64,000 nt of DNA, taken from assembly GCA_900088475.1 (NCBI GenBank), contig FLMG01003894.1:1-64000 (forward strand), given 5' to 3'. Shown here one piece after another: positions 12,062-27,388 of this stretch (its first letter is position 1; each line of letters opens with the position of its first letter). Source of the stretch: Hyphochytrium catenoides. Its lineage: Eukaryota; Protista; Hyphochytriomycota. Position numbers and translations under genes: made by a program. The notes under the pieces were generated by a model. It worked only from the letters and a program-made list of their open reading frames with translations, was not told the DNA's origin and did no database searches.

Positions 12062-15000
12062 ATGGAGCTTCCGCTGCCGTTGGCACCCATGACGATGCGG
12101 ACCCTAGGCGACCGGTCCTATGAAAAGAGAAAGGTGGCAGCGCTAGAAATTGAAGGGCTAGTCAAAGAGCTTCAGGAAAGGGGCAAGGAAGAGCAGATAC
12201 GGGCGATCATAAAGCTACTAGCTAAGGACTTCTGGTAAGCCTTGAAGTCCTTGCACTCCCTCTTGGGCAAGAGGCTTGCACGTCCGTCTAACCGAAACAT
12301 CGCGAGCAGCTGTTCCACAAATGCAAACCATAGGAAGGGCGGACTCATTGGGCTGGCGGCCACTGCTATCGGCTTGACTCATCAGACCAACATCTACCTC
12401 GTAGAGCTTCTGCCGCCTGTGCTTCACTGCTTTGACGATCCTGAGGGAAGGGTCCGATATTACGCATGTGAATCGCTCTATAACATTGCGAAGGTGGCTC
12501 GTGGAGGCATCTTGCCACACTTCAATGAAATATTCGACGGGCTCTGCAAGGTAATGTACTTGGCCTTAATAGGCTTTCGGCTGGGACTAGCTAACCCCTG
12601 CGATAAAGCTCTTTGCGGACGTAGATCTGGATGTGAAGAACGGCGCCAGTCTTCTTGATCGGCTAGTCAAAGATATAGTGACAGAGAGTGAGACCTTTAA
12701 TGTTGATCAGTTCATCCCTTTGCTTCAGAAGTACATCCGTATGACCAACCCTTACATTCGACAGTTGCTGGTACGCGACCCCGTGGATGTCGACGTTCGC
12801 CTACATCTTCCCTCTTCATTGTGGCCCCTTCTGTTGTCTCCTGTACTGTTCGCATGTTTGCCTGTACTCCTTTTCTTACCCTTCTGCCAACCCAATATCT
12901 CTAGCCTCCTCTCAGATTGTACTTGCAATGGCAATTTCAGTGCTCTAATCTCTTCTCCAGGTCGGCTGGATCACTGTTCTAGACTCTGTTCCAGACATTG
13001 ATATGCTTGACTGGCTGCCAGGTGAGGCATCTCTTTCTCGTCTTCTGGTACCAGTACATGGTGCGTTCAAGCTGCTGATCCCTTCTCTGTCATCGTCGTT
13101 GTAGACTTCTTGGATGGACTGTTCAATATGTTGAGCGACGGGAACCGAGAGATTCGGCAGGTGAGATGACTGAGGTAACTCCCTTGATGTCAAAAGTGCC
13201 CTTCCCACCGGAATGGGAGTAGACCGCAGGCCAGAGCCCTCATCAGTCGCCCTTGGCTTTGTCTTCTCACTCATGGTAACCTTCAGGCGGCAGATAGTGC
13301 CCTTGCGGAATTTCTTCGGGAGATCAAGCAGGCAGAGTACGTGGAAATCGCCCAGATGGTTCCAATACTAGTCGGTCAGGTAAGGCAAATCTGAGAAAGA
13401 AGATCAGGCCGCAAACTACCCTCAACAGCCACGACAAAGAATGTATGGACAGGGTCACCGTTAGACGGAGCGATAGAGAAGGGAGACCTTAAGAGACCTC
13501 CTACGTGTCAGATAATGCCTAACTGTATCCCACAGTGTCGATCTACAGAGAGGTTTAACCGCCTGACGGCCATGACCTGGGTTCTGGAGCTAGTGAACCT
13601 CGGTCGGGAGAGGATGATTCCCTTCTGTCCTGACCTACTAAGTACGTTCAGGCATACGAAAGAGAGCCTAGCATGGGACAGAGAGCCCTTGGAGAAGGTA
13701 GAAAGGAAGACTTGGGAAGGCGAACTGGGAGACATGTTCAATGCGAAAAAGAAATACACTTGAGAGGCAAGAGAGATGGAAGATGGCAAAGTCAAAATAA
13801 GTGTCGGACAGTGGATATTGACGGCATATGCTTACTCATTCTTCCAGGCGCCATCATGTACTGCATCTCAGACGAGGAGCATGAGATTCGGCAGGTAGCA
13901 GAAAGAGTTAATGAAGATCTCCTTAGCCTAGTCATGCAGACAACGTACGTCACGGACAGACTTGCCTCTTGTCATTTGCTTAGCCTGGAACCTTCTTTCT
14001 CTCCTTCCTCGTGCTTATCGTCTTGCTTGTGCAGGCAGGAGGTAGCTCTTGGGGCTCTATTGGACACTCTTCGCGCAGAGCTCTTCAGCGACCATGTCCC
14101 TACAAGGATGGCTACCCTCAAGTGGGTGGCAGTACTCCTTGATCGGTCTCATGGAAAGTTTGATGCCAGGATTGGTGAGGACACTTGGTGTAGCTACTAT
14201 CCTCTACCTTGCTAATTGCTTACTGGCTACATAGGATCAGTTATGTCTACCATCGCTAAATCGCTTTATCATATGAGCTCACATTCATTGTCCTCCCTAT
14301 TCTCGACGACCCTTGATCGCCAGGTTCGCTGCTACCGTCCCTCCTCAAGACCCTATCGGACGTCTCTGATGCCGTTGTGCTGTTGGATATATCCTGCTCT
14401 CCCACAGCAACTCTGTCTTCTAACTAGTCCCTCTCCTGTTGCTTGCTGGGGAAGTCATGTTGGACTCTATGTTCCTTCATTGTCTGCAGCGATAGGTCAA
14501 AGATGTCCTCACTGTCTGTCCTGTCCGCTTTCCTCTTCCTACTCGGCATTATTGACTCCGCTTCCTCCAGTTTTACGTAACTCCCGCTATGTGCCTTCTG
14601 TGCGCCTTGACTTTCCTTACCTCGAAGTATTGGCGCGGGTGGCGGTCGATGAGTCTGATTTACATAATGTCTTGCAAAGCGTGGTAGACCTCTTTGCCGC
14701 TGATAGAAGGTCGTACGCTGTTTCTGCCCATCGTCCCTCGTGTCTTTCTTATCTCACCATGACTTGTGCATGAACTTTTATCTTTGTATACATTTTTGGG
14801 GTTTCTTCCTATGTCTTGAGTCTTTCTCTATCTTCTAGTGTGTTGTTACTCTTCGATAATCGCTCATCTTGCTTGCTCCGCTGGGCTCACATGGATTGTC
14901 CATTGCCCCCAAATGCTTACCGTCAACTCTTTAGGTTGCTAGAGTCTCGCGGTAGTCTTATTATCAGAAAGCTCTGTGTCCTTTTGGACGCGAGGAACAT

Positions 15001-16673
15001 CTACACTCACTTGGCGCGCATCATCAAGGCGGAGGAAGATACAGAGTTTGCGAGCCTCATGGTGCAGACCCTCAATATTATTTTGCTGACAGCTCCAGAG
15101 CTTGTACGTGTACATCAATCGTCCTCTGTCTTAGCTTAGTCTGAGAAGTTCTAGTGTCATCTAGCTCAGGACCTAAGACGCTTCTGACCATCTGTTAACC
15201 ACTCTGGCACACCTCATAGCTTTCCTTGGCCCACATTCCTTACCTCCCAATGGGCGAGCAACACGACTAATGAATCTCTACAGAGGGAGTTGCGTCTCAT
15301 CCTGCGAAGGAGTTTCTCAGAGACAGGTAACGAGAGTGATAGAGAAGTCTTCAAGGTGAGATAGGCAATCCCAAAGATACGCTAGACGGGCATAAACCTC
15401 CATCCCAGGCCACATGCTATTCTTTTTTGTCCCTCTCCCAGTGTTCAGAGGGGTGCCTCTTGGTGATCACCACTTTCTTCGTTCTGTGGCTTCGTCCTGC
15501 AATTCTCAGCGCACTCCTAGGCTCCATGTCGTATCCTTAAGTTCTCTGTTGTTGGTTGGTTTGGCGCTGTTCCATTCCTCTCCTTGTCCTTCGGAGTCCA
15601 TTGCAAATGTACTTACCTTCACTTCTACCTTCACCCATCATACTCATCAGGTGCTATTCGAGTCGTGGTGCCACAACTCCGTTTCCACCTATAGTCTCTG
15701 CCTCTTGGCCGAAGCTTACGAGCTCTCAAGTTATCTTATCTCACAATTGTAAGCCCACTTCTGTACAGCTTTCTATGAAACGCTTCTGTTCAAAGCTTTC
15801 AATCACTTGGCTTCCAGCCCAGCAATTAGCTATCTCTTGCATTCTAGCAGAGTCTCACCTAGCTTACTTTGATAGCGCCGCTGTGGAGGTCTCGGTGGGC
15901 TTCTTGATGCAGATTGACAAGCTAGTGCAGCTCCTAGAGTCGCCCGTCTTCATCGGTAAGTTCCCAGCTCCTAAGAGGTCTATGAACACCTCCTTCCTCG
16001 AGCATTGTCTCGATCGTCCGCCTTTTGCACTTTGGGCGGGTGCACATACTTCCAGTCTGGGTGTTCCTACGTGACTGGTATAGCCCATTTCTAAGTGGCG
16101 CCCTTCTTGCTCCTAGGATTACGTCTGCAGCTTTTAGAGACGGATGCACCTTACTACCCTGCACTTGTCAAGAGCTTGTACGGCCTTTTGATGCTCTTGC
16201 CGCAGGTATAGAACCATACCGTCGCTCCTCTGTACACTCCCCTTAATAACACATCCATTCGTGTCTCCATTTGAATATCTTTGCCAAATGATCCATCCTC
16301 AGAGCTCAGCCTTTCGGATCTTGAGAGACCGTCTTTCGTCCGTAACTTCTATGGCTACAATCATGGATGTGAGCTTTCAGCACAGGTTGGTCACACTCTC
16401 TGGTCCTTAGCCTTCTGTTTCCTCCGCGCCACCAGGGCCCGGCCTGCTGCTGCCCACGTAGCACTCCATCTTACTGAGAATGCTAGGCCCTTTAGGCCGA
16501 GTTTATAACCTTCACGTGGTGCATGTAGGAAGGAGAGCCAGTCATCACAAGACAAGACGGAGCTTCAGGGACTTCTCAGCCACTTCCGAAGCATCCAGCA
16601 GCTTCATTCCGACATTCAGCAAGCAGCGGTTAACAAGAAGCGACTCACGAGCGTGAGATCGAAGGAGGAATAG
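12062..16673 (+). CDS. VAC14: VAC14 scaffold of the PIKfyve/Fab1 complex (about 18 exons; intron 10 is AT-AC)
   Basis: [92 protein letters not shown]. Confidence 0.97.
14389..14620 (+). other. U12-type (minor spliceosome) AT-AC intron in VAC14
   Basis: 5' ATATCCTG, branch GCCTTGAC (14604-14611), 3' TAC. Removal joins VVLLD|LEVLAR in frame. Confidence 0.92.
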
Positions 16674-17251: not shown

Positions 17252-20200
17252 CTATTTCTTTTTCTTCTTGAGCATCGCTTGGTTGAGCGCCACAGCGTCC
17301 GTCTTGACGGTGAAAGACTTTGTTGGCACAGGAGAGAACTGTTTCCTTCCAGAATTGTATCGATAGAGCTGTCCTATCATCTCATCACGGAGATAAAGAG
17401 GACCAACGCCATAGATTTTCTTGAGCTCCTGCTTGGTAGACGAGAAGGAATAGAGTGCGCGAAAGTGAAGAGACTTTTCGCTGCGGAAAAGAACGACAAA
17501 GTTGTCTGATGGATCTTTGTCCAGGGCTTCTAGAACCTGAGACAACGGGAGGAGAAAGGAGATATGAGTGGATATTGGATATGAAGCCTTTAGGAGTTCC
17601 TGGAAAAGAGGCGGAAGAGAGGACAGACGAGGCGGACCCAGAGGACGCGTCGGGAAGTAAACGGCAAGATTGCCTTAGCCATGAGATACTAGAGCTAACT
17701 TTCTAATCTGCTTTAAGAGGAGCCAGAGGGAAGAGGAGGAAGGGTTGCCCTGGGCTTTGATGCGCAGGAAGAGAGAAGGACGCAGTGGCAGGGAGCAAAC
17801 AACGTTGAGGAGAGCAAGTCTCACCTGAGAGGTAAAGAGAAAATAATAGGATTGAAAGAAGCAGAAGGGTCCCTCTGAGATGGTCTCAATAGAGAGAAGA
17901 GAGGGAAGTGCAGGGTAATAAGAATGAAGACGGGAGGAGACGTCATACTCACCTCTTGATTCTCTTTCGCCATATGGTGCCCAGCCAGGAGGTTAAACTC
18001 TAGAGCCTTCCGGATTATCCGCCGGTTGGAGGGCCGCTGGTTGCTGAGGTCAATGAGAGGCATCTCGTGGTCTTCTCTAGCCTCAGACTCCAAATCTTGC
18101 TCTTCTTCATCTCTGTCCGTCTCTCTCCCTGACATGGATGAGAGGAGAGAGGACCGTCTTGAGGCGGAAGAACGGTCTGTTGACTGATTGTCCTGCTGTG
18201 TCTCCTCTAAGAGAGTCCTTGTTTTCTGCTTGGCCAAAGTTCCCCTCTCCTTTTCTCTCTCCTTTTCTTCCCGTAGTTTCTTCTGCCTCAGAACTTCGAG
18301 CTTCTCCGCTTTTCTCCTCTGAACCTCGTCATTGTTCGGGGTCATAAATATGTCAATACGGGAGGAAGGCTCTTTCATCTCTCTTTGCGTGAGCCCAGTC
18401 TCTGGCGCTGCAGCAGCGGGGAGAGAGAGAACCTGGGCGGGTCTGTTTAGTGGCGCCTGCTCTTGATGGGTCAGAGGGGAACCTGAAGCTGGAGGCTCCG
18501 ACGCTTTTAGAGGTTTGACAAGGGTAGTTGGAAGGTGAAGAGGAGGAGGCGGCTTAGACTTTGGTGCTTCCTTAAAGGTCTCAGACGCCGTCTCATACAT
18601 CCTTCCGTCTCTTTGATCTTCGTCTTCTTCTCTACGTACTGCCGTGTTAGTTGGAAAGCTCTGCAGCTTTTGCCCAGACAGTGTAGCTCCATTTAGTGAG
18701 GTTTTCTCGTCACAAGCGCCTGAGCCCTCATCCTTTGTTTCATCCTTGGATCGCTCTTCCTCCTCTACGTTTCGACTGACTTTAGTCAGTATGCGCTGAA
18801 GGAGGCGCAACCTCCGCTGATGGTTCTCTCTCATTCTTTCTTCTCTTTCCTCCATCATCTGTCTACGTCGCCGCATCTCGTTGTTTAGCAGGGCGAAGCC
18901 TATAGCAACCCTTTGAGGCTGTTTGCTCTGCTTCTCTGGTACAGCTGAAGGAAAAGACGGCAATAGAACTGATCCGATGGTTTGAGAGGATTGTAGCAGC
19001 TGTGTCTTGGCAACGGTACCATCGCCATCATCGAGCCAGGACGAGTGGACGTCCGGCTTGTGCTCCTGCTCTTCTGCTCTCGGCTTCACCTCTTCATTGG
19101 GATAAGTTGGCTTGATGGACACTGTTAGATGAGCCGCCTGTCCGCCAGGTTCTAAAGGTTTCTCGGCTTCTGGAGCTCCAAGATCCTGCCTTGCTAAAGT
19201 TTCCAACATTCCCTCCGTAGCGTCCAGCTCTGAGACTTGTCGAGGCTCAATGGGAGGCTCCAGTGGCACCATAGCTGCTGAGTTATAGAGAATTCCCTTC
19301 GGGTCTCTTCTGCTAGCTGAGGCTGGTCTTTTCTTCGGTGTTAGAGCAAGGCTGTGATCGTGCAGGCGTTTGGCAGTCTCCTGGAAGCTGCTATGGACCT
19401 CCTGGTGCAGTTGTCTCAGCTTATCTTCCACTGAGAGTTGCAATACCTTCTCAGGCTCTTCTGCCACTGCCACAAACTGTGACGACGGCTCAGGGTGCTG
19501 CCTGACCTCCCTTGGTGGGTCTACTTTTGCCGTTGAAGCCTTGGCTGGACTCGGACTCTCGTTTACTTTGATCTTGTTCCTCGGTAAGGTCTCTTCGTGG
19601 CTAGATGGCAGTTCATCGCTTAAGAGTGAACCCGCCTCTGAGCCTTTCTCTCTTTGTTCCATCTCAGTCGTCCCTATCATGGACTGGCGATGGATGGAAA
19701 GAATCGAAGGCTCTGTCTGAGATCTCTGGAAACCTAAAGCAGTCGGAATGCTGCCGAACGTTGACCATCTCTTTCTTCTCCGACCAGTGCTAAGGGGAGC
19801 TGGGATCAGTGTTTCTTGCTGAGTACCGGCAGCGAGGGCTCTACCCGCAGTCTTGGCACCTTCCACAACGTCCGCAGTCGTAAGCTGTGCAAGATTCAGC
19901 AAAGGCACAGGCCGACCGAAGGGCTGGAGGGCAGGAGAAGGATTGGCAGGCAACAGGACTGTTCCTCTCTCTTGATGTGCACCCACAGCCCCTGTCAAGG
20001 TGAAGGATTGGTTACTCTGGTCTGAAGACACTGTGCCCTTGAGGATGGACTCGATCTGAGGGCTGAGCTTCGAATATGACCGCCTGAAGTTCTGGAGTAG
20101 CATTTGACCCTTGGACAGTCGGAGAGGTTCCTCCCGGACAGTGGAGGATACAGTGTGCCCTGGCTCAAGATCGGGCTCTATTGTTTGAGTTAGCTTTGGC

Positions 20201-21538
20201 TCGGTATTGTCCTCTGCGTAGCTCTTACTAGGTCTCGTCTCTGGTCTCTGTTCATCCCTGGTAGGAGCCGCAGCTTCAAGCGGCTCACTAGGCGGTGCTA
20301 TCGCAAGTGAGGTGACATCGGTCGCTTTAGGAGTTTCTGGAAGTATGGAGGGATTGACCCGTGCCGAACTAACATGAGGCACTGTGGCCGGGTTTTCTAC
20401 TTCAGGACTGGCGGAAGGTTCTCGCGCCTCTTTAAGGTCTATTCTTGGCGTCAGAAGCGTCTTTTCTGCGGTACCTGAGGCAGATGATCCACTACTGCCA
20501 ACAAGCCGACCTAGATCATCCTTTAGCGGTGAGTCCCGTCTAGTAACCGTCCAGATTGTATATTCGGAGTTCTGAGGTACATTGTCAGCAATGTACGCTG
20601 CGACTTCCCCTACTCCCGAACACAGGCAGAAGAGTGGGCCTGAGGCCTTCGTATGTCGCCTCTCTGAAGGGTCAAAGATCACCAAGCTCTCGAAGGCCTG
20701 CTTAGGAAACCAGATCGCGAAGTGCTGAACGCCGTCTGAGAAGATAGCCACCGCTTCGTTGTCGGCAAGCCGCCGTTTGAGACCTGATAAAGAGTTGTCT
20801 AGATCGCTTACATCTTGAAGAACACTTCCAAGGTCCCAAGATGGATTCAGGACGATGGCGCGCTTGCTATAGTCTCCAACCTGCTGAAGAACATCCCGCA
20901 CCGAGAAGTCATCTTCCGGAGAGCTGTCGTTGCGATGGAGAAGCTTGGTAGCATTTTTGCAGCCAGTTTCAATGATCTGAGGAACATGGGGAGATGCCCA
21001 GAAAGTGAATTGTAAGAGAAGGTCGGCAGCGTGAGAATCCCTTTGCCCTCATTAGAAGTTTATTCCCTCCCCACCTTCGTTTTATCTCTCCCTCTCTTTC
21101 TCTCTCTCCCTCTCTCTCTGTCTGTCTCTCTTACTCTTTCTGTATACTTCCGTCTCTCGTGCTCTGTATTGCTTCTCGCTCTCCGTGATAAGATCTGGTT
21201 CCTCTTTGATTCTTCTCTGCTATCACCTGGCTGACACCCTCACGGACATGGATACCTTTGACCAACATCCCTAATCCATCTCTATGTCCTAAATCTGGCC
21301 CCGGGACCTGTCTTTTGTCCTGGTGTCCTTTCTCATACAACCATCACTTACTTTCTGAATGAAAGAAGGCGTCGCCTTGTGACTGAAGAGCTGCTTCCAG
21401 GTTACGCCGCCCGCCAAGAGGCGTATAGCGCAGTCTGTGACTACTGAGAGCGATGTCAAGCCGTACAGAGGCGCTTCTTTGGAGATGCCGGTGTAGCTTT
21501 GAATCCCAAGAGTCCCGTGGACTGTTTGGACTGTGCAT
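17252..21538 (-). CDS. Large protein with C-terminal CAMSAP/Patronin CKK microtubule-binding domain, coiled coils and a long disordered middle
   Basis: SNRRIIRKALEFNLLAG..|VLEALDKDPSDNFVVLFR..HFRALY..KIYGVGP..LYRYNSGRKQFSPVPTKSFTVKTDAVAL matches CKK. 1026-aa central exon; 5' exons and start are tentative. Confidence 0.8.
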
Positions 21539-22924: not shown

Positions 22925-25788
22925 ATGGAGGACGAAAAGAAAGGTCAACCAGAGGAGCAGGAGGAGGCCCTGCGGAAGGAGATGACGGTCGGCAAGGAGG
23001 CTGAGAAAGAAGACGCCACTGAGGAAGGCAAGAAGGAGACCGAGAAAGAAGAGGCCGGTGAAGAAGGCAAAAAGGACAGTACCTCCGCGGCTACCCAGAC
23101 TCTTCTCAAGAAGCTTGAGGAGGCTGACCAACAAATCTTGCAGGAAGTTTCGGACGCGGAGCCTCTCGTCTTTTCCGTCAATTTAGTTACTCCTTCGGGC
23201 TCCACCGTCCGATTGGATCATGTTAGCACCTCGGACACGGTCCTTGGACTCAAGCAGCTCATCGGTGATCTACCTGAGCTTGCCTGCGAGACGTGCTACC
23301 GCCTTGACCTCGTTAACGGCTCGGAAATGTAAGTATAGGCCAGGCACCTTCCGTCTACCTGATCTTTATCTAGAGGTCTGCTTTGCATCTTCCTATATTT
23401 CTCCTCCCTACCTCCCCTGTCAGAATGCGCCGCTGCTTCCCTTTCTGTTTAACTGCCCTCTGACCGAGTATCTCTTGTGCCGTGCGTCTCAGAGTCACTC
23501 TGAACGACTACTCAGAGATCACCGAGTTTCCTGCGCTTAAGGAAGACTGTGAACTGCGCATGGTGAGAGAGATTTATGACGCCAGGAAGGCGAAGCTTCA
23601 TTTAAAGAGATTTCGAGAAGTTCTTGCGAACCCGCCAGTTCCTCCTCCTCCAGCAGCTAGCCTCACAGAGACCGAAGAAGCAGCAGACGCAGAGCCGGAG
23701 AGCAGCTCGACTTCGGATCTACCTCTGCCTCCGGGATCAGGAGAGAGGAAGAAGCACAAGAAGGGAAAGAAGAAGAATGCCAAGAAGGCAGCAGCCGATC
23801 AGGAACTAAAACGCGCTCTCGAGGAGCTTCAGTCTCTCGATATTCCTGTCAAAGTGAACCTACTTAAGTTCTATGAGCATGTAAATAACGCAGTGGGCTC
23901 CAGCAAAGAAGAAGGATCGGCCTCTAAGAGCAAGGAGGCCGAAAAGGATAGTGTCTGGCTGCCACAATGCCTAAAGTCCATCTGCTTTTCGGGGTTCAAC
24001 CCTCCTCCTGGGCCGCGGAGGCTACAGGGAGACCTCTTCTACCTGGAAGTAACGCCTTTGGAGGGTCCTGTGCTGCACATCACCGCCTGTCCTCAGGGCT
24101 TCTACGTCAACCGTTCCAAGGGAGAGACGTTCTCTGCTCTTCCTGCTGATCAATCTTTCCTTTCTCACTCACTTCTGGAGCTGCTGTCGACTGCCTCTCC
24201 TTCTTTCACTTCCCAATATGAGAAGCTTCTGAAGGAGGCAGAGAAGATTGCTTTAGAAGGCAGTCTCCCCATTGAAGCACTGCTAGCTTCAGGGAAGAAC
24301 GTCGGTGCCAAGCCTCAGTGGAACTACCCTTATAAGAAGAGTCAGAAAGAGCCAGATCATAATTTTGATAAGGTGCGAGCGGAGGAGAGCCTTCTGTACA
24401 GCTATGGAATGGAGGAGAAGGGTGTGGTTAGGGACTGGAACGAGGAATATCAGTGCTGCAAAGAGCTTCCTTCCGCCACATTGAAGGAAAGAGTTGCTCG
24501 GGCCCGTGTTCTCACCAAGATATACGCTGAGTTTGAAGACGCAGCCCGAGCCGGAGCGGTGGCCATTGTACAAGGCCACATTCCTGCTCTGAACCCCATG
24601 GATCCGCCCAAGGCGCATGTCTATGTGTTCAACTCTATCTTTTTCTCTTACGCCGTGGACGGAAGAAATGTCTTTTCTGGAATGGGAGGGGATGAGGCTG
24701 CACGGAGTTCTGCTAACCACGACCTCAGGGGAGTGATGCAGGTCAACCTGGCAGGCATACCAGGCTTACACACCTTGCTGACAGCGGTAGTAGACTATTG
24801 TGGGCTGAGAGTGGTGGCACAAAGCATCATTCCTGGTATTTTGCAGGGAGAGGCAGCGTCCACCCTCGTCTATGGCTCTGTGGACAATGGAAATACTCTC
24901 GCTTCGGATCCTAAGATGCATGAGATGATGTGCCAGCTAGGAAAGGCCCTGGGAATGGTAGAGAGAGAGATCAAGCCTCTTGGAAAGGCACAGAATGAGG
25001 AAGAAGGAGAGGCAGAAACCGAGGGGTCTGCAGATGAGAAGCTCGGCGTCAGTATTGGAGGAGGACAAGCTTCAGAGGATCCGCAGAGGATTTGTGGGCC
25101 TGTGGATTGCAAGGGTATCAAGGGCTCAGATGGTCGCTTTTACATCCTTGACTTGGTGAGGATCACCCCGCGGGACTACACTTACTACGATTTAGCCATG
25201 AAGAGGAGCCAAGTGAAGGAGGACGACACCGAGAAGAAACCAGAAGAAGAGGGAGAGAGCCAGGACAAGAAAGAGAAAGAAACAGCAGGGCTTAACTTCA
25301 GCGCCGTGGATGATCCCACGGTCCTCCTCCGACCGGAGTTGGTTCAGCTCTACCTAAAATGGAGTCAACACCGCAAGAGAGCAGCCAAGGAGGGCAAGAA
25401 GGGAGAGAATGGAAGCGCCTCGACGGAAAAGGCCTCGGCGGACGCGGAAGAGTCAGGTTCTGGGAACAAGGAAGAGGAGCAGACGCCAAGTCTAGAAAAG
25501 CAGGAAAAAGCGGAGGACAAGCAGGATGAAGCTCTTGATGCCACTCCTCTCAACGTGAATGTCTTCATGCCTTATGCATGCTCCACGGATGCTGAGGAGG
25601 CTGCTCAGGACATCGAGAACGCCAAGGAGGCAGCGGTGTATCTGCAAAAGGTGGGTATCTATCTCGGGACTTTGTCTGATGCATCTTCCTACTCGGTGCG
25701 CAGTATGGCCATTATCCTAGTCCTAGCCCCATTCTTCTTCAACTCCGTGACCTAGGCTGAACCAGCGACACTCATTCTCTGCCTCCTC

Positions 25789-25846
<58 letters not shown>

Positions 25847-27388
25847 GTCATCGTCCTTTGCCCTTCCTCTCCCTGCTCGCAATCTCGGTTCCTTCTCTTT
25901 CTGTCGGCATAGGTGGTCATTCCAAGCTTTCTTTCGGACCTTGTGCGGGGCACAGTGAATGTTAGCGATGGACTCACTCTGACTGAGGCACTGCACTCCG
26001 TCGGCATTAACGCACGCTACTTGGGCCGCCTTGCCGCTCTTCTGACCGAGCTAGAGAAAGAACTCTCTCCTCCTCAGTTTCTCCTTGAGCTCTTGGAGAC
26101 AGAGATGGTTGCTAGAGCGGCGAAGAGGCTGTTAAGGGACTTTTTGTCTGAGGAGAGTGCCCGGCTTGCCCCTGGCTCCATAATCCTATCTCTCTTAAAC
26201 AGCCTGTTGGGGTCTCCTGCTGCTGAAAAGACTGAGCCTACGGGAAAGACGGGGACTAAGAATAAGCAGCAGAAAGCGAAAGAGAGTGGAAACTCCGGTG
26301 CTTCCGCCCCACCCTCTGATGTCCTGAACAGGACCACTCTATGGGGGAAAGTCAAGCAGGAAGTACAGAGTCACTTTGGCTACAATCTCCGCTTGTGGGG
26401 CTCAACAGCGGGCTCGGATCGATGTGATGCTCTGCCACTTCTGAGGCGGTTCTGCCTCGTGACAGGTGTGCAGGTTCTTGCAAAAGAATACGACTTCACT
26501 TCTTCGTCTCCGTTCTCCCTTGAAGACGTCTATGATCTTCTCCCCGTTGTGAAGTCTAGTCAGCCCAAGCAGCCCCTGAAGGATGCTGCAGCCATCTTAG
26601 AGAGGGCTCGCCTCTATCTGGCAGCAGGTCAAGCTCCTAAGGCCTACCAACTGGCACAAGAGAGTGCCCTTCTTCTCTTCCAAGTCACCGGTCCGGTCCA
26701 TCAGGAGCTAGCCTATACCTCTGTCTTGCTTGCTATGGCAGCCTACGAGGCTCAGGACCCTCTTGGTGCCTTTTCTCAGCAGCAAAGGGCACTCTCTCTC
26801 TTCTCGCAGCTAGACGGTCTAGACCATCCTCACACGGCGCATGCACACGCTACAATGGCCCTTTACTGCCAGGCAGTAGGTGATGGACCCTTGGCTATTC
26901 GTCACACACGGCGAGCTATCTACTTGTTAGAACTTGTGGGAGGAGAGCGAGGAAGAGAGGTCATGGTGCTCTATCATAAGCTGGGACAGCTTTACCACGA
27001 GATGGGCCTGGTGAATGGTGCTCTTAAGAGCTTCGGAGAGAGTCTTAGGCGCTGCACTGACGATCATCTCCATATCGCTGCTGTCCTGCACTCTCTGGCG
27101 CTCGTTTATTCATCGGTTGGCGCCTACAGGGAGGCGATGAAGTTTGAAAAGAAGGCCTTCGCACTGTTCAAGGAGCTCCTTGGGGAGAATGACTATAGGA
27201 CTAAGGACTGCGCCCTCCTCCTCGCCGTCTTCACTGAGAGGGCAGTGGAAGGTGCCAAGCTGGACAAGCAGCAGGAGGCAGCGGCGGCATCTGATGCGGC
27301 TGCAGCTGACCTAGTAGCTTCAGAACTGCTGAGGCTAGAGGAAGAGAAGGCAGGAAAGAAGAAGAAGAAGCAGAAGGGCAAGAAGTAA
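22925..27388 (+). CDS. CLU1: Clustered mitochondria protein (CLU1/CLUH), 3 exons, C-terminal TPRs
   Basis: SGFNPPPGPRRLQGDLFYLEV, RDWNEEYQCCKELP, VDYCGLRVVAQSIIPGIL, KGIKGSDGRFYILDLVRITPRD, LHSVGINARYLG. Confidence 0.97.

What the first reader, a model, noticed from the sequence alone, without database searches (positions are those of the whole stretch)
14389..14620. Minor-spliceosome (U12) AT-AC intron in VAC14
Seen: the exon 14324-14388 ends ...[13 protein letters not shown], and the next in-frame VAC14 sequence LEVLAR starts at 14621. The 232 nt between begin ATATCCTG, carry GCCTTGAC with the branch A 10 nt from the end, and finish TAC. All other introns checked in the window are GT-AG, and no GT donor inside this exon restores the frame. 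Established: RTATCCT plus CCTTRAC plus a short branch-to-3'ss distance defines U12 introns, which need U11/U12/U4atac/U6atac snRNPs and have been lost in many protist lineages. Inference: this organism keeps a minor spliceosome, which could be new for its lineage. Standard gene predictors would mis-annotate this gene.
Basis: partly seen in the sequence, partly recalled or inferred. Interest (0 to 1): 0.85.

Follow-up and report, generated by a model that had tools for sequence, protein, structure and literature searches.

The report
U12-type AT-AC intron in VAC14
The tenth intron of this protist's VAC14 gene has the sequence signature of the rare introns removed by the minor (U12) spliceosome, an expected find because the organism is a close relative of oomycetes, where minor splicing is already known.

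Summary
Window 14389-14620 (232 nt) starts ATATCCTG, carries CCTTGAC with the branch A 10 nt from the end, and ends AC. It lies between two exons of an otherwise intact VAC14 gene of at least 17 exons.

Joining 14388 to 14621 gives ...AVVLLD|LEVLARV.... This aligns without a gap to dozens of VAC14 proteins and is uninterrupted coding DNA in four other stramenopile genomes. The other 15 introns I mapped are GT-AG. It is the only credible U12 candidate in the window.

The genome is very probably Hyphochytrium catenoides, sister to oomycetes. Oomycetes and Blastocystis are known to have minor introns, so this is a new member of a known kind.

I found no RNA evidence: no RNA run was listed, and the three runs laid are DNA. 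No minor snRNA lies in the window.

The scan has noted this kind of intron on other DNA of the same genome many times. One note (ICMT) was followed up as RNA-confirmed, and another reports an RNPC3 gene. I could not check either.

The intron position is not shared with any VAC14 gene I examined. The vertebrate VAC14 U12 intron corresponds instead to a GT-AG intron here (15749-15875).

The parts
12062..16344 (+). VAC14 gene: start codon to the end of the 17th mapped exon. The 3' end and stop codon are not resolved.
   Evidence: Pfam Vac14_Fab1_bd and Vac14_Fig4_bd match its exons. Exon chain from tblastn. Splice sites chosen by homology scoring. The 611-aa model has no stops and is 62-70% identical to oomycete VAC14.
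14324..14388 (+). Exon 10, ending ...[13 protein letters not shown]
14389..14620 (+). Intron 10: 232 nt, phase 0, AT-AC, U12-type by sequence
   Evidence: Reading through it hits a stop after 13 codons.
14389..14396 (+). 5' splice site ATATCCTG, matching 7 of 8 positions of RTATCCTT
14605..14611 (+). Branch-site box CCTTGAC. The predicted branch A is 14610, 10 nt before the last intron base.
14618..14620 (+). 3' end of the intron: TAC, terminal dinucleotide AC
14621..14709 (+). Exon 11, starting [12 protein letters not shown]...
15749..15875 (+). Intron 14: GT-AG, major-type, phase 2. It sits at the position of the vertebrate VAC14 U12-type intron. Included for comparison only.

Best explanation
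Window 14389-14620 is a genuine U12-type (minor-class) AT-AC intron, the tenth intron of an intact VAC14 gene in a hyphochytrid stramenopile, very probably Hyphochytrium catenoides.

The mechanism below is inferred from the established pathway of minor splicing and was not shown here. The U11/U12 di-snRNP binds the ATATCCT donor through U11. It binds the CCTTGAC branch box through U12, bulging A14610. U4atac/U6atac.U5 then joins, and U6atac replaces U11 at the donor. Two transesterifications join 14388 to 14621, producing GAT|CTC and the conserved peptide VVLLD-LEVLARV.

An unspliced transcript would terminate 13 codons into the intron and lose the Fig4-binding half of the protein. VAC14 function therefore depends on minor splicing.

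Shown here: the motifs, their exact placement on homology-defined exon ends, the integrity of the gene, and the lack of an acceptable major-type alternative. Inferred: actual excision and its dependence on the minor snRNPs.
For: - Motifs and coordinates were read directly.
- The spliced peptide aligns gaplessly across the junction to more than 40 VAC14 homologues.
- The same peptide is continuous genomic coding sequence in Phytophthora sojae (L003), Triparma strigata (L007) and two metagenomic relatives (L001, L002).
- AT-AC 14389-14620 scores best among all in-frame splice pairs.
- The 15 other introns are GT-AG with GTAAG/GTGAG/GTACG-type donors.
- The branch A lies 10 nt from the 3' end.
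- It is the only RTATCCT plus CCTTRAY pair in the window.
- Oomycetes, the sister group, have minor snRNAs and mostly AT-AC U12 introns (PMC2846911; PMC10639083; PMC11347168).
- Unchecked scan notes report many other AT-AC U12 introns, one said to be RNA-confirmed, and an RNPC3 gene in the same genome.
Against: - No RNA evidence for this junction. No RNA run was listed, and the three runs that hold the locus are DNA with no joints.
- No minor snRNA gene lies in the window, and the rest of the genome could not be searched.
- Donor position +8 is G, not T. The two bases upstream of the branch box differ from TTCCTTRAY.
- A 10-nt branch-to-3' distance is at the short end of the working range.
- The intron position is not shared with any of the seven other VAC14 loci examined, so conservation gives no support.
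- Logan contigs of all three DNA runs leave 14310-14617 uncovered, so the stretch has no independent sequence confirmation.
Confidence: 0.85

Rival explanations
1. The intron is removed by the major spliceosome at alternative GT-AG or GC-AG sites. This would give a VAC14 isoform with an insertion or substitution at this point.
For: One search lists in-frame GT/GC-AG pairs, for example 14382-14502 and 14396-14627. The intron is open in one frame because it is pyrimidine-rich.
Against: Every such pair inserts 30-60 residues with no homology, or removes or replaces the invariant D-L-E-V-L-A. Their donors (GTTGGA, GCTCTC, GTCTTC) are unlike the 15 real donors of the gene.
Confidence: 0.05
2. It is an AT-AC intron spliced by the major (U2-dependent) spliceosome, a rare known class, so it says nothing about a minor spliceosome.
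For: U2-type AT-AC introns exist (established knowledge). No snRNA evidence was obtained here.
Against: U2-type AT-AC introns lack the RTATCCT donor and the CCTTRAC box close to the 3' end. Both are present here at the right places.
Confidence: 0.05
3. It is a relic. The lineage has lost minor splicing, the intron is no longer removed, and this VAC14 copy is a dying gene. Alternatively, the stretch is an assembly artefact.
For: No RNA evidence. There is a hole in the Logan contigs over 14310-14617 in all three DNA runs.
Against: The gene is otherwise intact over 17 exons, with no stops and 62-70% identity to orthologues. Both U12 motifs are well preserved. The tool itself states that a hole proves nothing. 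Scan notes report other U12 introns and RNPC3 in this genome (unchecked).
Confidence: 0.04

Closest known systems
U12-type AT-AC introns of oomycetes (Phytophthora sojae and P. infestans peptidyl-prolyl isomerase and others; Saprolegnia)
   Same: Same intron class and the same AT-AC subtype, in the sister lineage within Pseudofungi. Minor snRNAs were reported there (PMC2846911; PMC10639083; PMC11347168).
   Different: A different gene and position. P. sojae VAC14 has no intron at this site. Saprolegnia VAC14 has a GT-AG intron 25 nt upstream.
Vertebrate VAC14 minor intron (mouse Vac14, shown U12-dependent in vitro, PMC8848931; viper locus L005)
   Same: The same gene carries a U12-type intron. 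The viper intron has a GTATCCTT donor and CCTTGAC 12 nt before the AG.
   Different: It is a different intron: GT-AG subtype, in the Fig4-binding region, phase 2. Its position corresponds to window intron 14 (15749-15875), which is major-type here. The window's U12 intron lies about 140 codons upstream, where vertebrates have no intron at that exact site (their nearest is GT-AG, 5 codons upstream).
Blastocystis minor introns
   Same: Also a stramenopile. Its minor introns are mostly AT-AC (77%) and often phase 0 (PMC10639083), like this one.
   Different: Blastocystis minor introns average about 42 nt; this one is 232 nt. Blastocystis belongs to a distant stramenopile branch.

Membership tests
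U12-type (minor-spliceosome) intron | 5' splice site matching /RTATCCTT | tested here: met
   ATATCCTG at 14389-14396, 7 of 8 positions. It falls exactly at the homology-defined exon end.
U12-type (minor-spliceosome) intron | Branch-site box matching TTCCTTRAY | tested here: met
   cgCCTTGAC at 14603-14611. The core 7 of 7 positions match; the two upstream T positions do not.
U12-type (minor-spliceosome) intron | Short distance from branch A to 3' splice site (about 10-26 nt) | tested here: met
   A14610 to the last intron base 14620 is 10 nt. This is at the short end of the range; the range itself is from my own knowledge.
U12-type (minor-spliceosome) intron | Terminal dinucleotides AT-AC or GT-AG | tested here: met
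   AT at 14389-14390 and AC at 14619-14620.
U12-type (minor-spliceosome) intron | Excised in vivo at the predicted junction | not testable with these tools
   No RNA run was listed. X1-X3 are DNA with no joints.
U12-type (minor-spliceosome) intron | The genome encodes U11, U12, U4atac and U6atac snRNAs and U11/U12-specific proteins | not testable with these tools
An unchecked scan note reports an RNPC3 gene.
U12-type (minor-spliceosome) intron | Position conserved as a minor intron in other lineages (supportive, not defining) | tested here: not met
   No intron at this exact site in P. sojae, S. parasitica, Tribonema minus, Triparma strigata, Vipera latastei or two metagenomic relatives.
VAC14 (PIKfyve/Fab1 scaffold protein) | Vac14_Fab1_bd and Vac14_Fig4_bd domains, with full-length similarity to VAC14 orthologues | tested here: met
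   PF12755 E=3e-31 and PF11916 E=4e-18. The 611-aa model is 62-70% identical to oomycete VAC14.
U2-type AT-AC intron | AT-AC termini with a major-type donor and no U12 branch box near the 3' end | tested here: not met
   The donor is ATATCCT and a CCTTGAC box lies 10 nt from the 3' end.

The most novel reading that the evidence does not exclude
This intron may be one of an unusually large, AT-AC-dominated and partly lineage-specific set of minor introns in hyphochytrids. Its position is shared with none of the VAC14 genes examined. If so, stramenopiles would show a shifted minor-intron repertoire (as in Blastocystis) or even minor-intron gain, which is otherwise known at scale only in Physarum.

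Alternatively, the GT-AG intron two codons downstream in Tribonema could be this intron converted to major type by a splice-site shift after ochrophytes lost the minor spliceosome.
Probability: 0.15. Interest if true: 0.5.

Novelty: new member of a known kind. Interest (0 to 1): 0.27.

Why it matters
It adds hyphochytrids to the stramenopile lineages that keep minor-class introns. This fits retention of the minor spliceosome in the common ancestor of oomycetes and hyphochytrids, and its loss in ochrophytes.

In practical terms, VAC14 cannot be modelled correctly in this genome by predictors restricted to GT-AG or GC-AG introns.

The comparison also gives a clean example of a vertebrate minor-intron position occupied by a major-type intron in a stramenopile. 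That matches the published pattern (PMC11347168).

None of this changes current understanding; it is a useful annotation-level result.

Tried and rejected
- **RNA evidence.** Three calls to the look-up of sequencing runs failed as busy. The RNA search then listed nothing. The 'any' search gave only DNA runs. Read laying showed contiguous genomic contigs, no joints, and a hole over the intron.
- **Minor snRNAs in the window.** Rfam found nothing at gathering threshold.
- **A Physarum-like genome with massive U12 expansion.** Rejected: there are only 12 RTATCCT sites in 64 kb, about the chance level, and one credible intron.
- **The organism's own annotated VAC14 model.** It did not appear in any protein search.
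- **PDB sequence search with exon 2.** It found only transportin HEAT repeats and no VAC14.
- **Positional conservation.** None was found. The plant locus (Nymphaea) was not on record.
- **The GTATCCTTA at 15531 as a second U12 donor.** Rejected: it lies inside intron 13, has no matching branch box, and its G is heterozygous.
- **Supplementary species tables of Larue and Roy 2023.** They are not held as text, so I could not check whether Hyphochytrium was in their survey.

Full report
**Observation.**
- Exon 10 of a plus-strand gene ends ...TTGGAT at 14388.
- The next 232 nt begin ATATCCTG.
- CCTTGAC lies at 14605-14611, with its A at 14610, ten bases before the last intron base.
- The stretch ends TAC at 14620, and coding sequence resumes with CTCGAA at 14621.
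- Reading through from exon 10 meets a stop after 13 codons.

**The gene.**
Pfam places the neighbouring exons in Vac14_Fab1_bd (E=3e-31) and Vac14_Fig4_bd (E=4e-18). tblastn with three stramenopile VAC14 proteins gives a collinear chain of exons from 12062 to about 16370.

I then scored every in-frame GT-AG, GC-AG and AT-AC pair between neighbouring exon cores against eight homologues. For 15 of the 16 introns the best solution is GT-AG, with donors such as GTAAG, GTGAG and GTACG. For intron 10 the best solution is AT-AC 14389-14620.

The resulting 17-exon, 611-residue model has no stop. It is 62-70% identical to oomycete VAC14 over its whole length. The 3' end of the gene was not resolved.

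**Are the boundaries forced?**
The spliced peptide ...[20 protein letters not shown]|[12 protein letters not shown]... aligns without a gap across the junction to more than 40 diverse VAC14 proteins. The same stretch is uninterrupted genomic coding sequence in four places:
- Phytophthora sojae (L003);
- Triparma strigata (L007);
- two metagenomic relatives (L001, L002).

One search lists 38 in-frame pairs, including GT-AG and GC-AG ones. Every one of them inserts 30-60 unrelated residues, deletes conserved ones, or replaces the invariant LEV through a very poor GC donor. Only 14389-14620 reproduces the conserved sequence.

**Is it more than chance?**
A loose pair anywhere in 64 kb is expected about 1.2 times per dinucleotide-shuffled window. 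"Loose pair" here means RTATCCT, then CCTTRAY within 1 kb, then a matching terminal dinucleotide 8-15 nt on. The window contains only 12 RTATCCT sites in all, which is about the chance level. So the motifs alone carry no weight.

What carries weight is that both motifs and the AC fall exactly on exon ends fixed independently by homology. I estimate the chance of that at about 1e-8 per intron (2/4^7 x 8x4/4^7 x 1/16). None of the other RTATCCT sites has a convincing exon end and branch box. This is therefore the only credible minor-type intron in the window, and the genome is not Physarum-like.

**Organism.**
- The named best hits of VAC14 (62-70%) and of the neighbouring CLU/TIF31 gene (43-45%) are oomycetes, with no closer named relative.
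- A note of this scan reports a kalium-channelrhodopsin-clade gene in the same genome. Those channels were discovered in Hyphochytrium catenoides.
- The genome paper for H. catenoides (PMC5795050) gives a mean intron length of 208 bp. It describes data of two GAIIx lanes plus one HiSeq lane, deposited as an update of a 2011 BioProject.
- The runs that hold this locus fit that description. They are two runs from 2011 and one from 2017 in a single study, with word depths of about 25x, 3x and 400x.

I take the genome to be H. catenoides or a very close relative. This is an inference with about 80% confidence.

**What is known.**
- Phytophthora has minor snRNAs and a handful of U12 introns, mostly AT-AC, while diatoms have none (PMC2846911).
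- Saprolegnia has dozens of minor introns, and Blastocystis has hundreds, 77% of them AT-AC and about half in phase 0. Ochrophytes and alveolates show none (PMC10639083).
- U11, U12 and U6atac genes were found in the Gyrista clade (PMC11347168).
- No paper in the library mentions Hyphochytrium together with U12. The only spliceosome mention in the genome paper is incidental.

A minor intron in a hyphochytrid is thus apparently unreported but phylogenetically expected.

**Evidence not obtained.**
- No RNA run was listed for this locus.
- The runs that hold it are genomic. Their contigs run through introns and show no joints.
- All three leave 14310-14617 uncovered. The tool says this proves nothing, but it means the intron sequence has no independent confirmation.
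- No snRNA of any kind reaches the Rfam threshold in the window, and the rest of the genome was out of reach.

Notes from this scan, which I could not check, add three things:
- many further AT-AC U12 introns in the same genome;
- a follow-up that calls the ICMT intron RNA-confirmed;
- an RNPC3 (U11/U12-65K) gene.

The same stretch was also flagged independently from an overlapping window.

**Comparison of intron positions.**

| VAC14 locus | What lies at or near the window's U12 intron site |
|---|---|
| P. sojae (L003) | No intron |
| Saprolegnia parasitica (L004) | GT-AG intron 25 nt upstream |
| Tribonema minus (L006) | GT-AG intron two codons downstream |
| Triparma strigata (L007) | No intron |
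| Viper (L005) | GT-AG intron five codons upstream |

Mouse Vac14 is a known minor-intron gene whose intron is U12-dependent in vitro (PMC8848931). In the viper locus that intron is recognisable: a GTATCCTT donor and CCTTGAC 12 nt before the AG, phase 2, inside the Phe codon of ...LIQK-F-GDLEV.... The window has an intron at exactly that position and phase (15749-15875), but it is major-type (GTAAGC...). This matches the published observation that human minor introns correspond to major introns or to no intron in stramenopiles.

The window's U12 intron is therefore not the animal one. Either it was inherited and lost elsewhere, which is plausible because oomycetes are intron-poor, or it is lineage-specific. 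Conversion of a U12 intron to a U2 intron by a shift of a few codons has been described (PMC2846911). The Tribonema intron two codons away could be such a descendant, but this is speculation.

**Mechanism.**
This is inferred from the established minor-splicing pathway. U11 pairs with the ATATCCT donor. U12 pairs with the CCTTGAC box and bulges A14610. U4atac/U6atac.U5 joins, and U6atac takes over the donor. The exons are then ligated 14388|14621. Without this step the protein would lack its Fig4-binding half.

**Verdict.**
It is a typical U12-type AT-AC intron in VAC14, in a lineage where it was to be expected. It counts as a new member of a known kind and is of modest interest.

Noticed in passing
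window 15749-15875; L005 about 63586-64471: Window intron 14 of VAC14 is GT-AG and phase 2, inside the Phe codon of ...LISQ-F-AAVEV.... It lies at exactly the position and phase of the U12-type intron of viper VAC14 (GTATCCTT...CCTTGAC, 12 nt before AG). So a vertebrate minor-intron position is occupied by a major-type intron here.
   Followed up: partly
window 15531: GTATCCTTA, a perfect U12-like donor, lies inside intron 13 with no matching branch box. Its G is heterozygous G/T in DNA runs X1 and X2. It is probably a chance match.
   Followed up: partly
window 14310-14617: Logan contigs of all three DNA runs that hold the locus leave this stretch (exon 10 plus nearly the whole U12 intron) uncovered, while the flanks are covered at up to about 400x. 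This is unexplained. Dense heterozygosity or the tool's filter are possible causes.
   Followed up: no
window 12235-16302 (VAC14 introns): Introns are pyrimidine-rich on the coding strand, 59% overall and up to 69%, against 50% in exons. This explains the strong negative AT and GC skew of 14001-16000 and the long open frame through intron 10.
   Followed up: partly
window 12551, 15749, 15956 and the viper locus L005: Three VAC14 introns (introns 2, 14 and 15) share their position with the vertebrate gene. This suggests very old intron positions in this gene.
   Followed up: partly
window 17821-20901 (-): A 1026-residue open reading frame has no Pfam match at E<=0.001. It is purine-rich on the plus strand and may be low-complexity or a lineage-specific protein.
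   Followed up: no
window 23482-27385 (+): A CLU/TIF31 (clustered mitochondria) gene lies in two long exons. Its best named relatives are oomycetes at only 43-45% identity.
   Followed up: partly
L001 10001-12433; L002 10001-12614: Marine metagenome and SRA contigs carry intron-poor VAC14 genes that are 84% identical to the window in exon 2. These are unnamed stramenopile relatives as similar to the window in this exon as any named genome, or more so.
   Followed up: no
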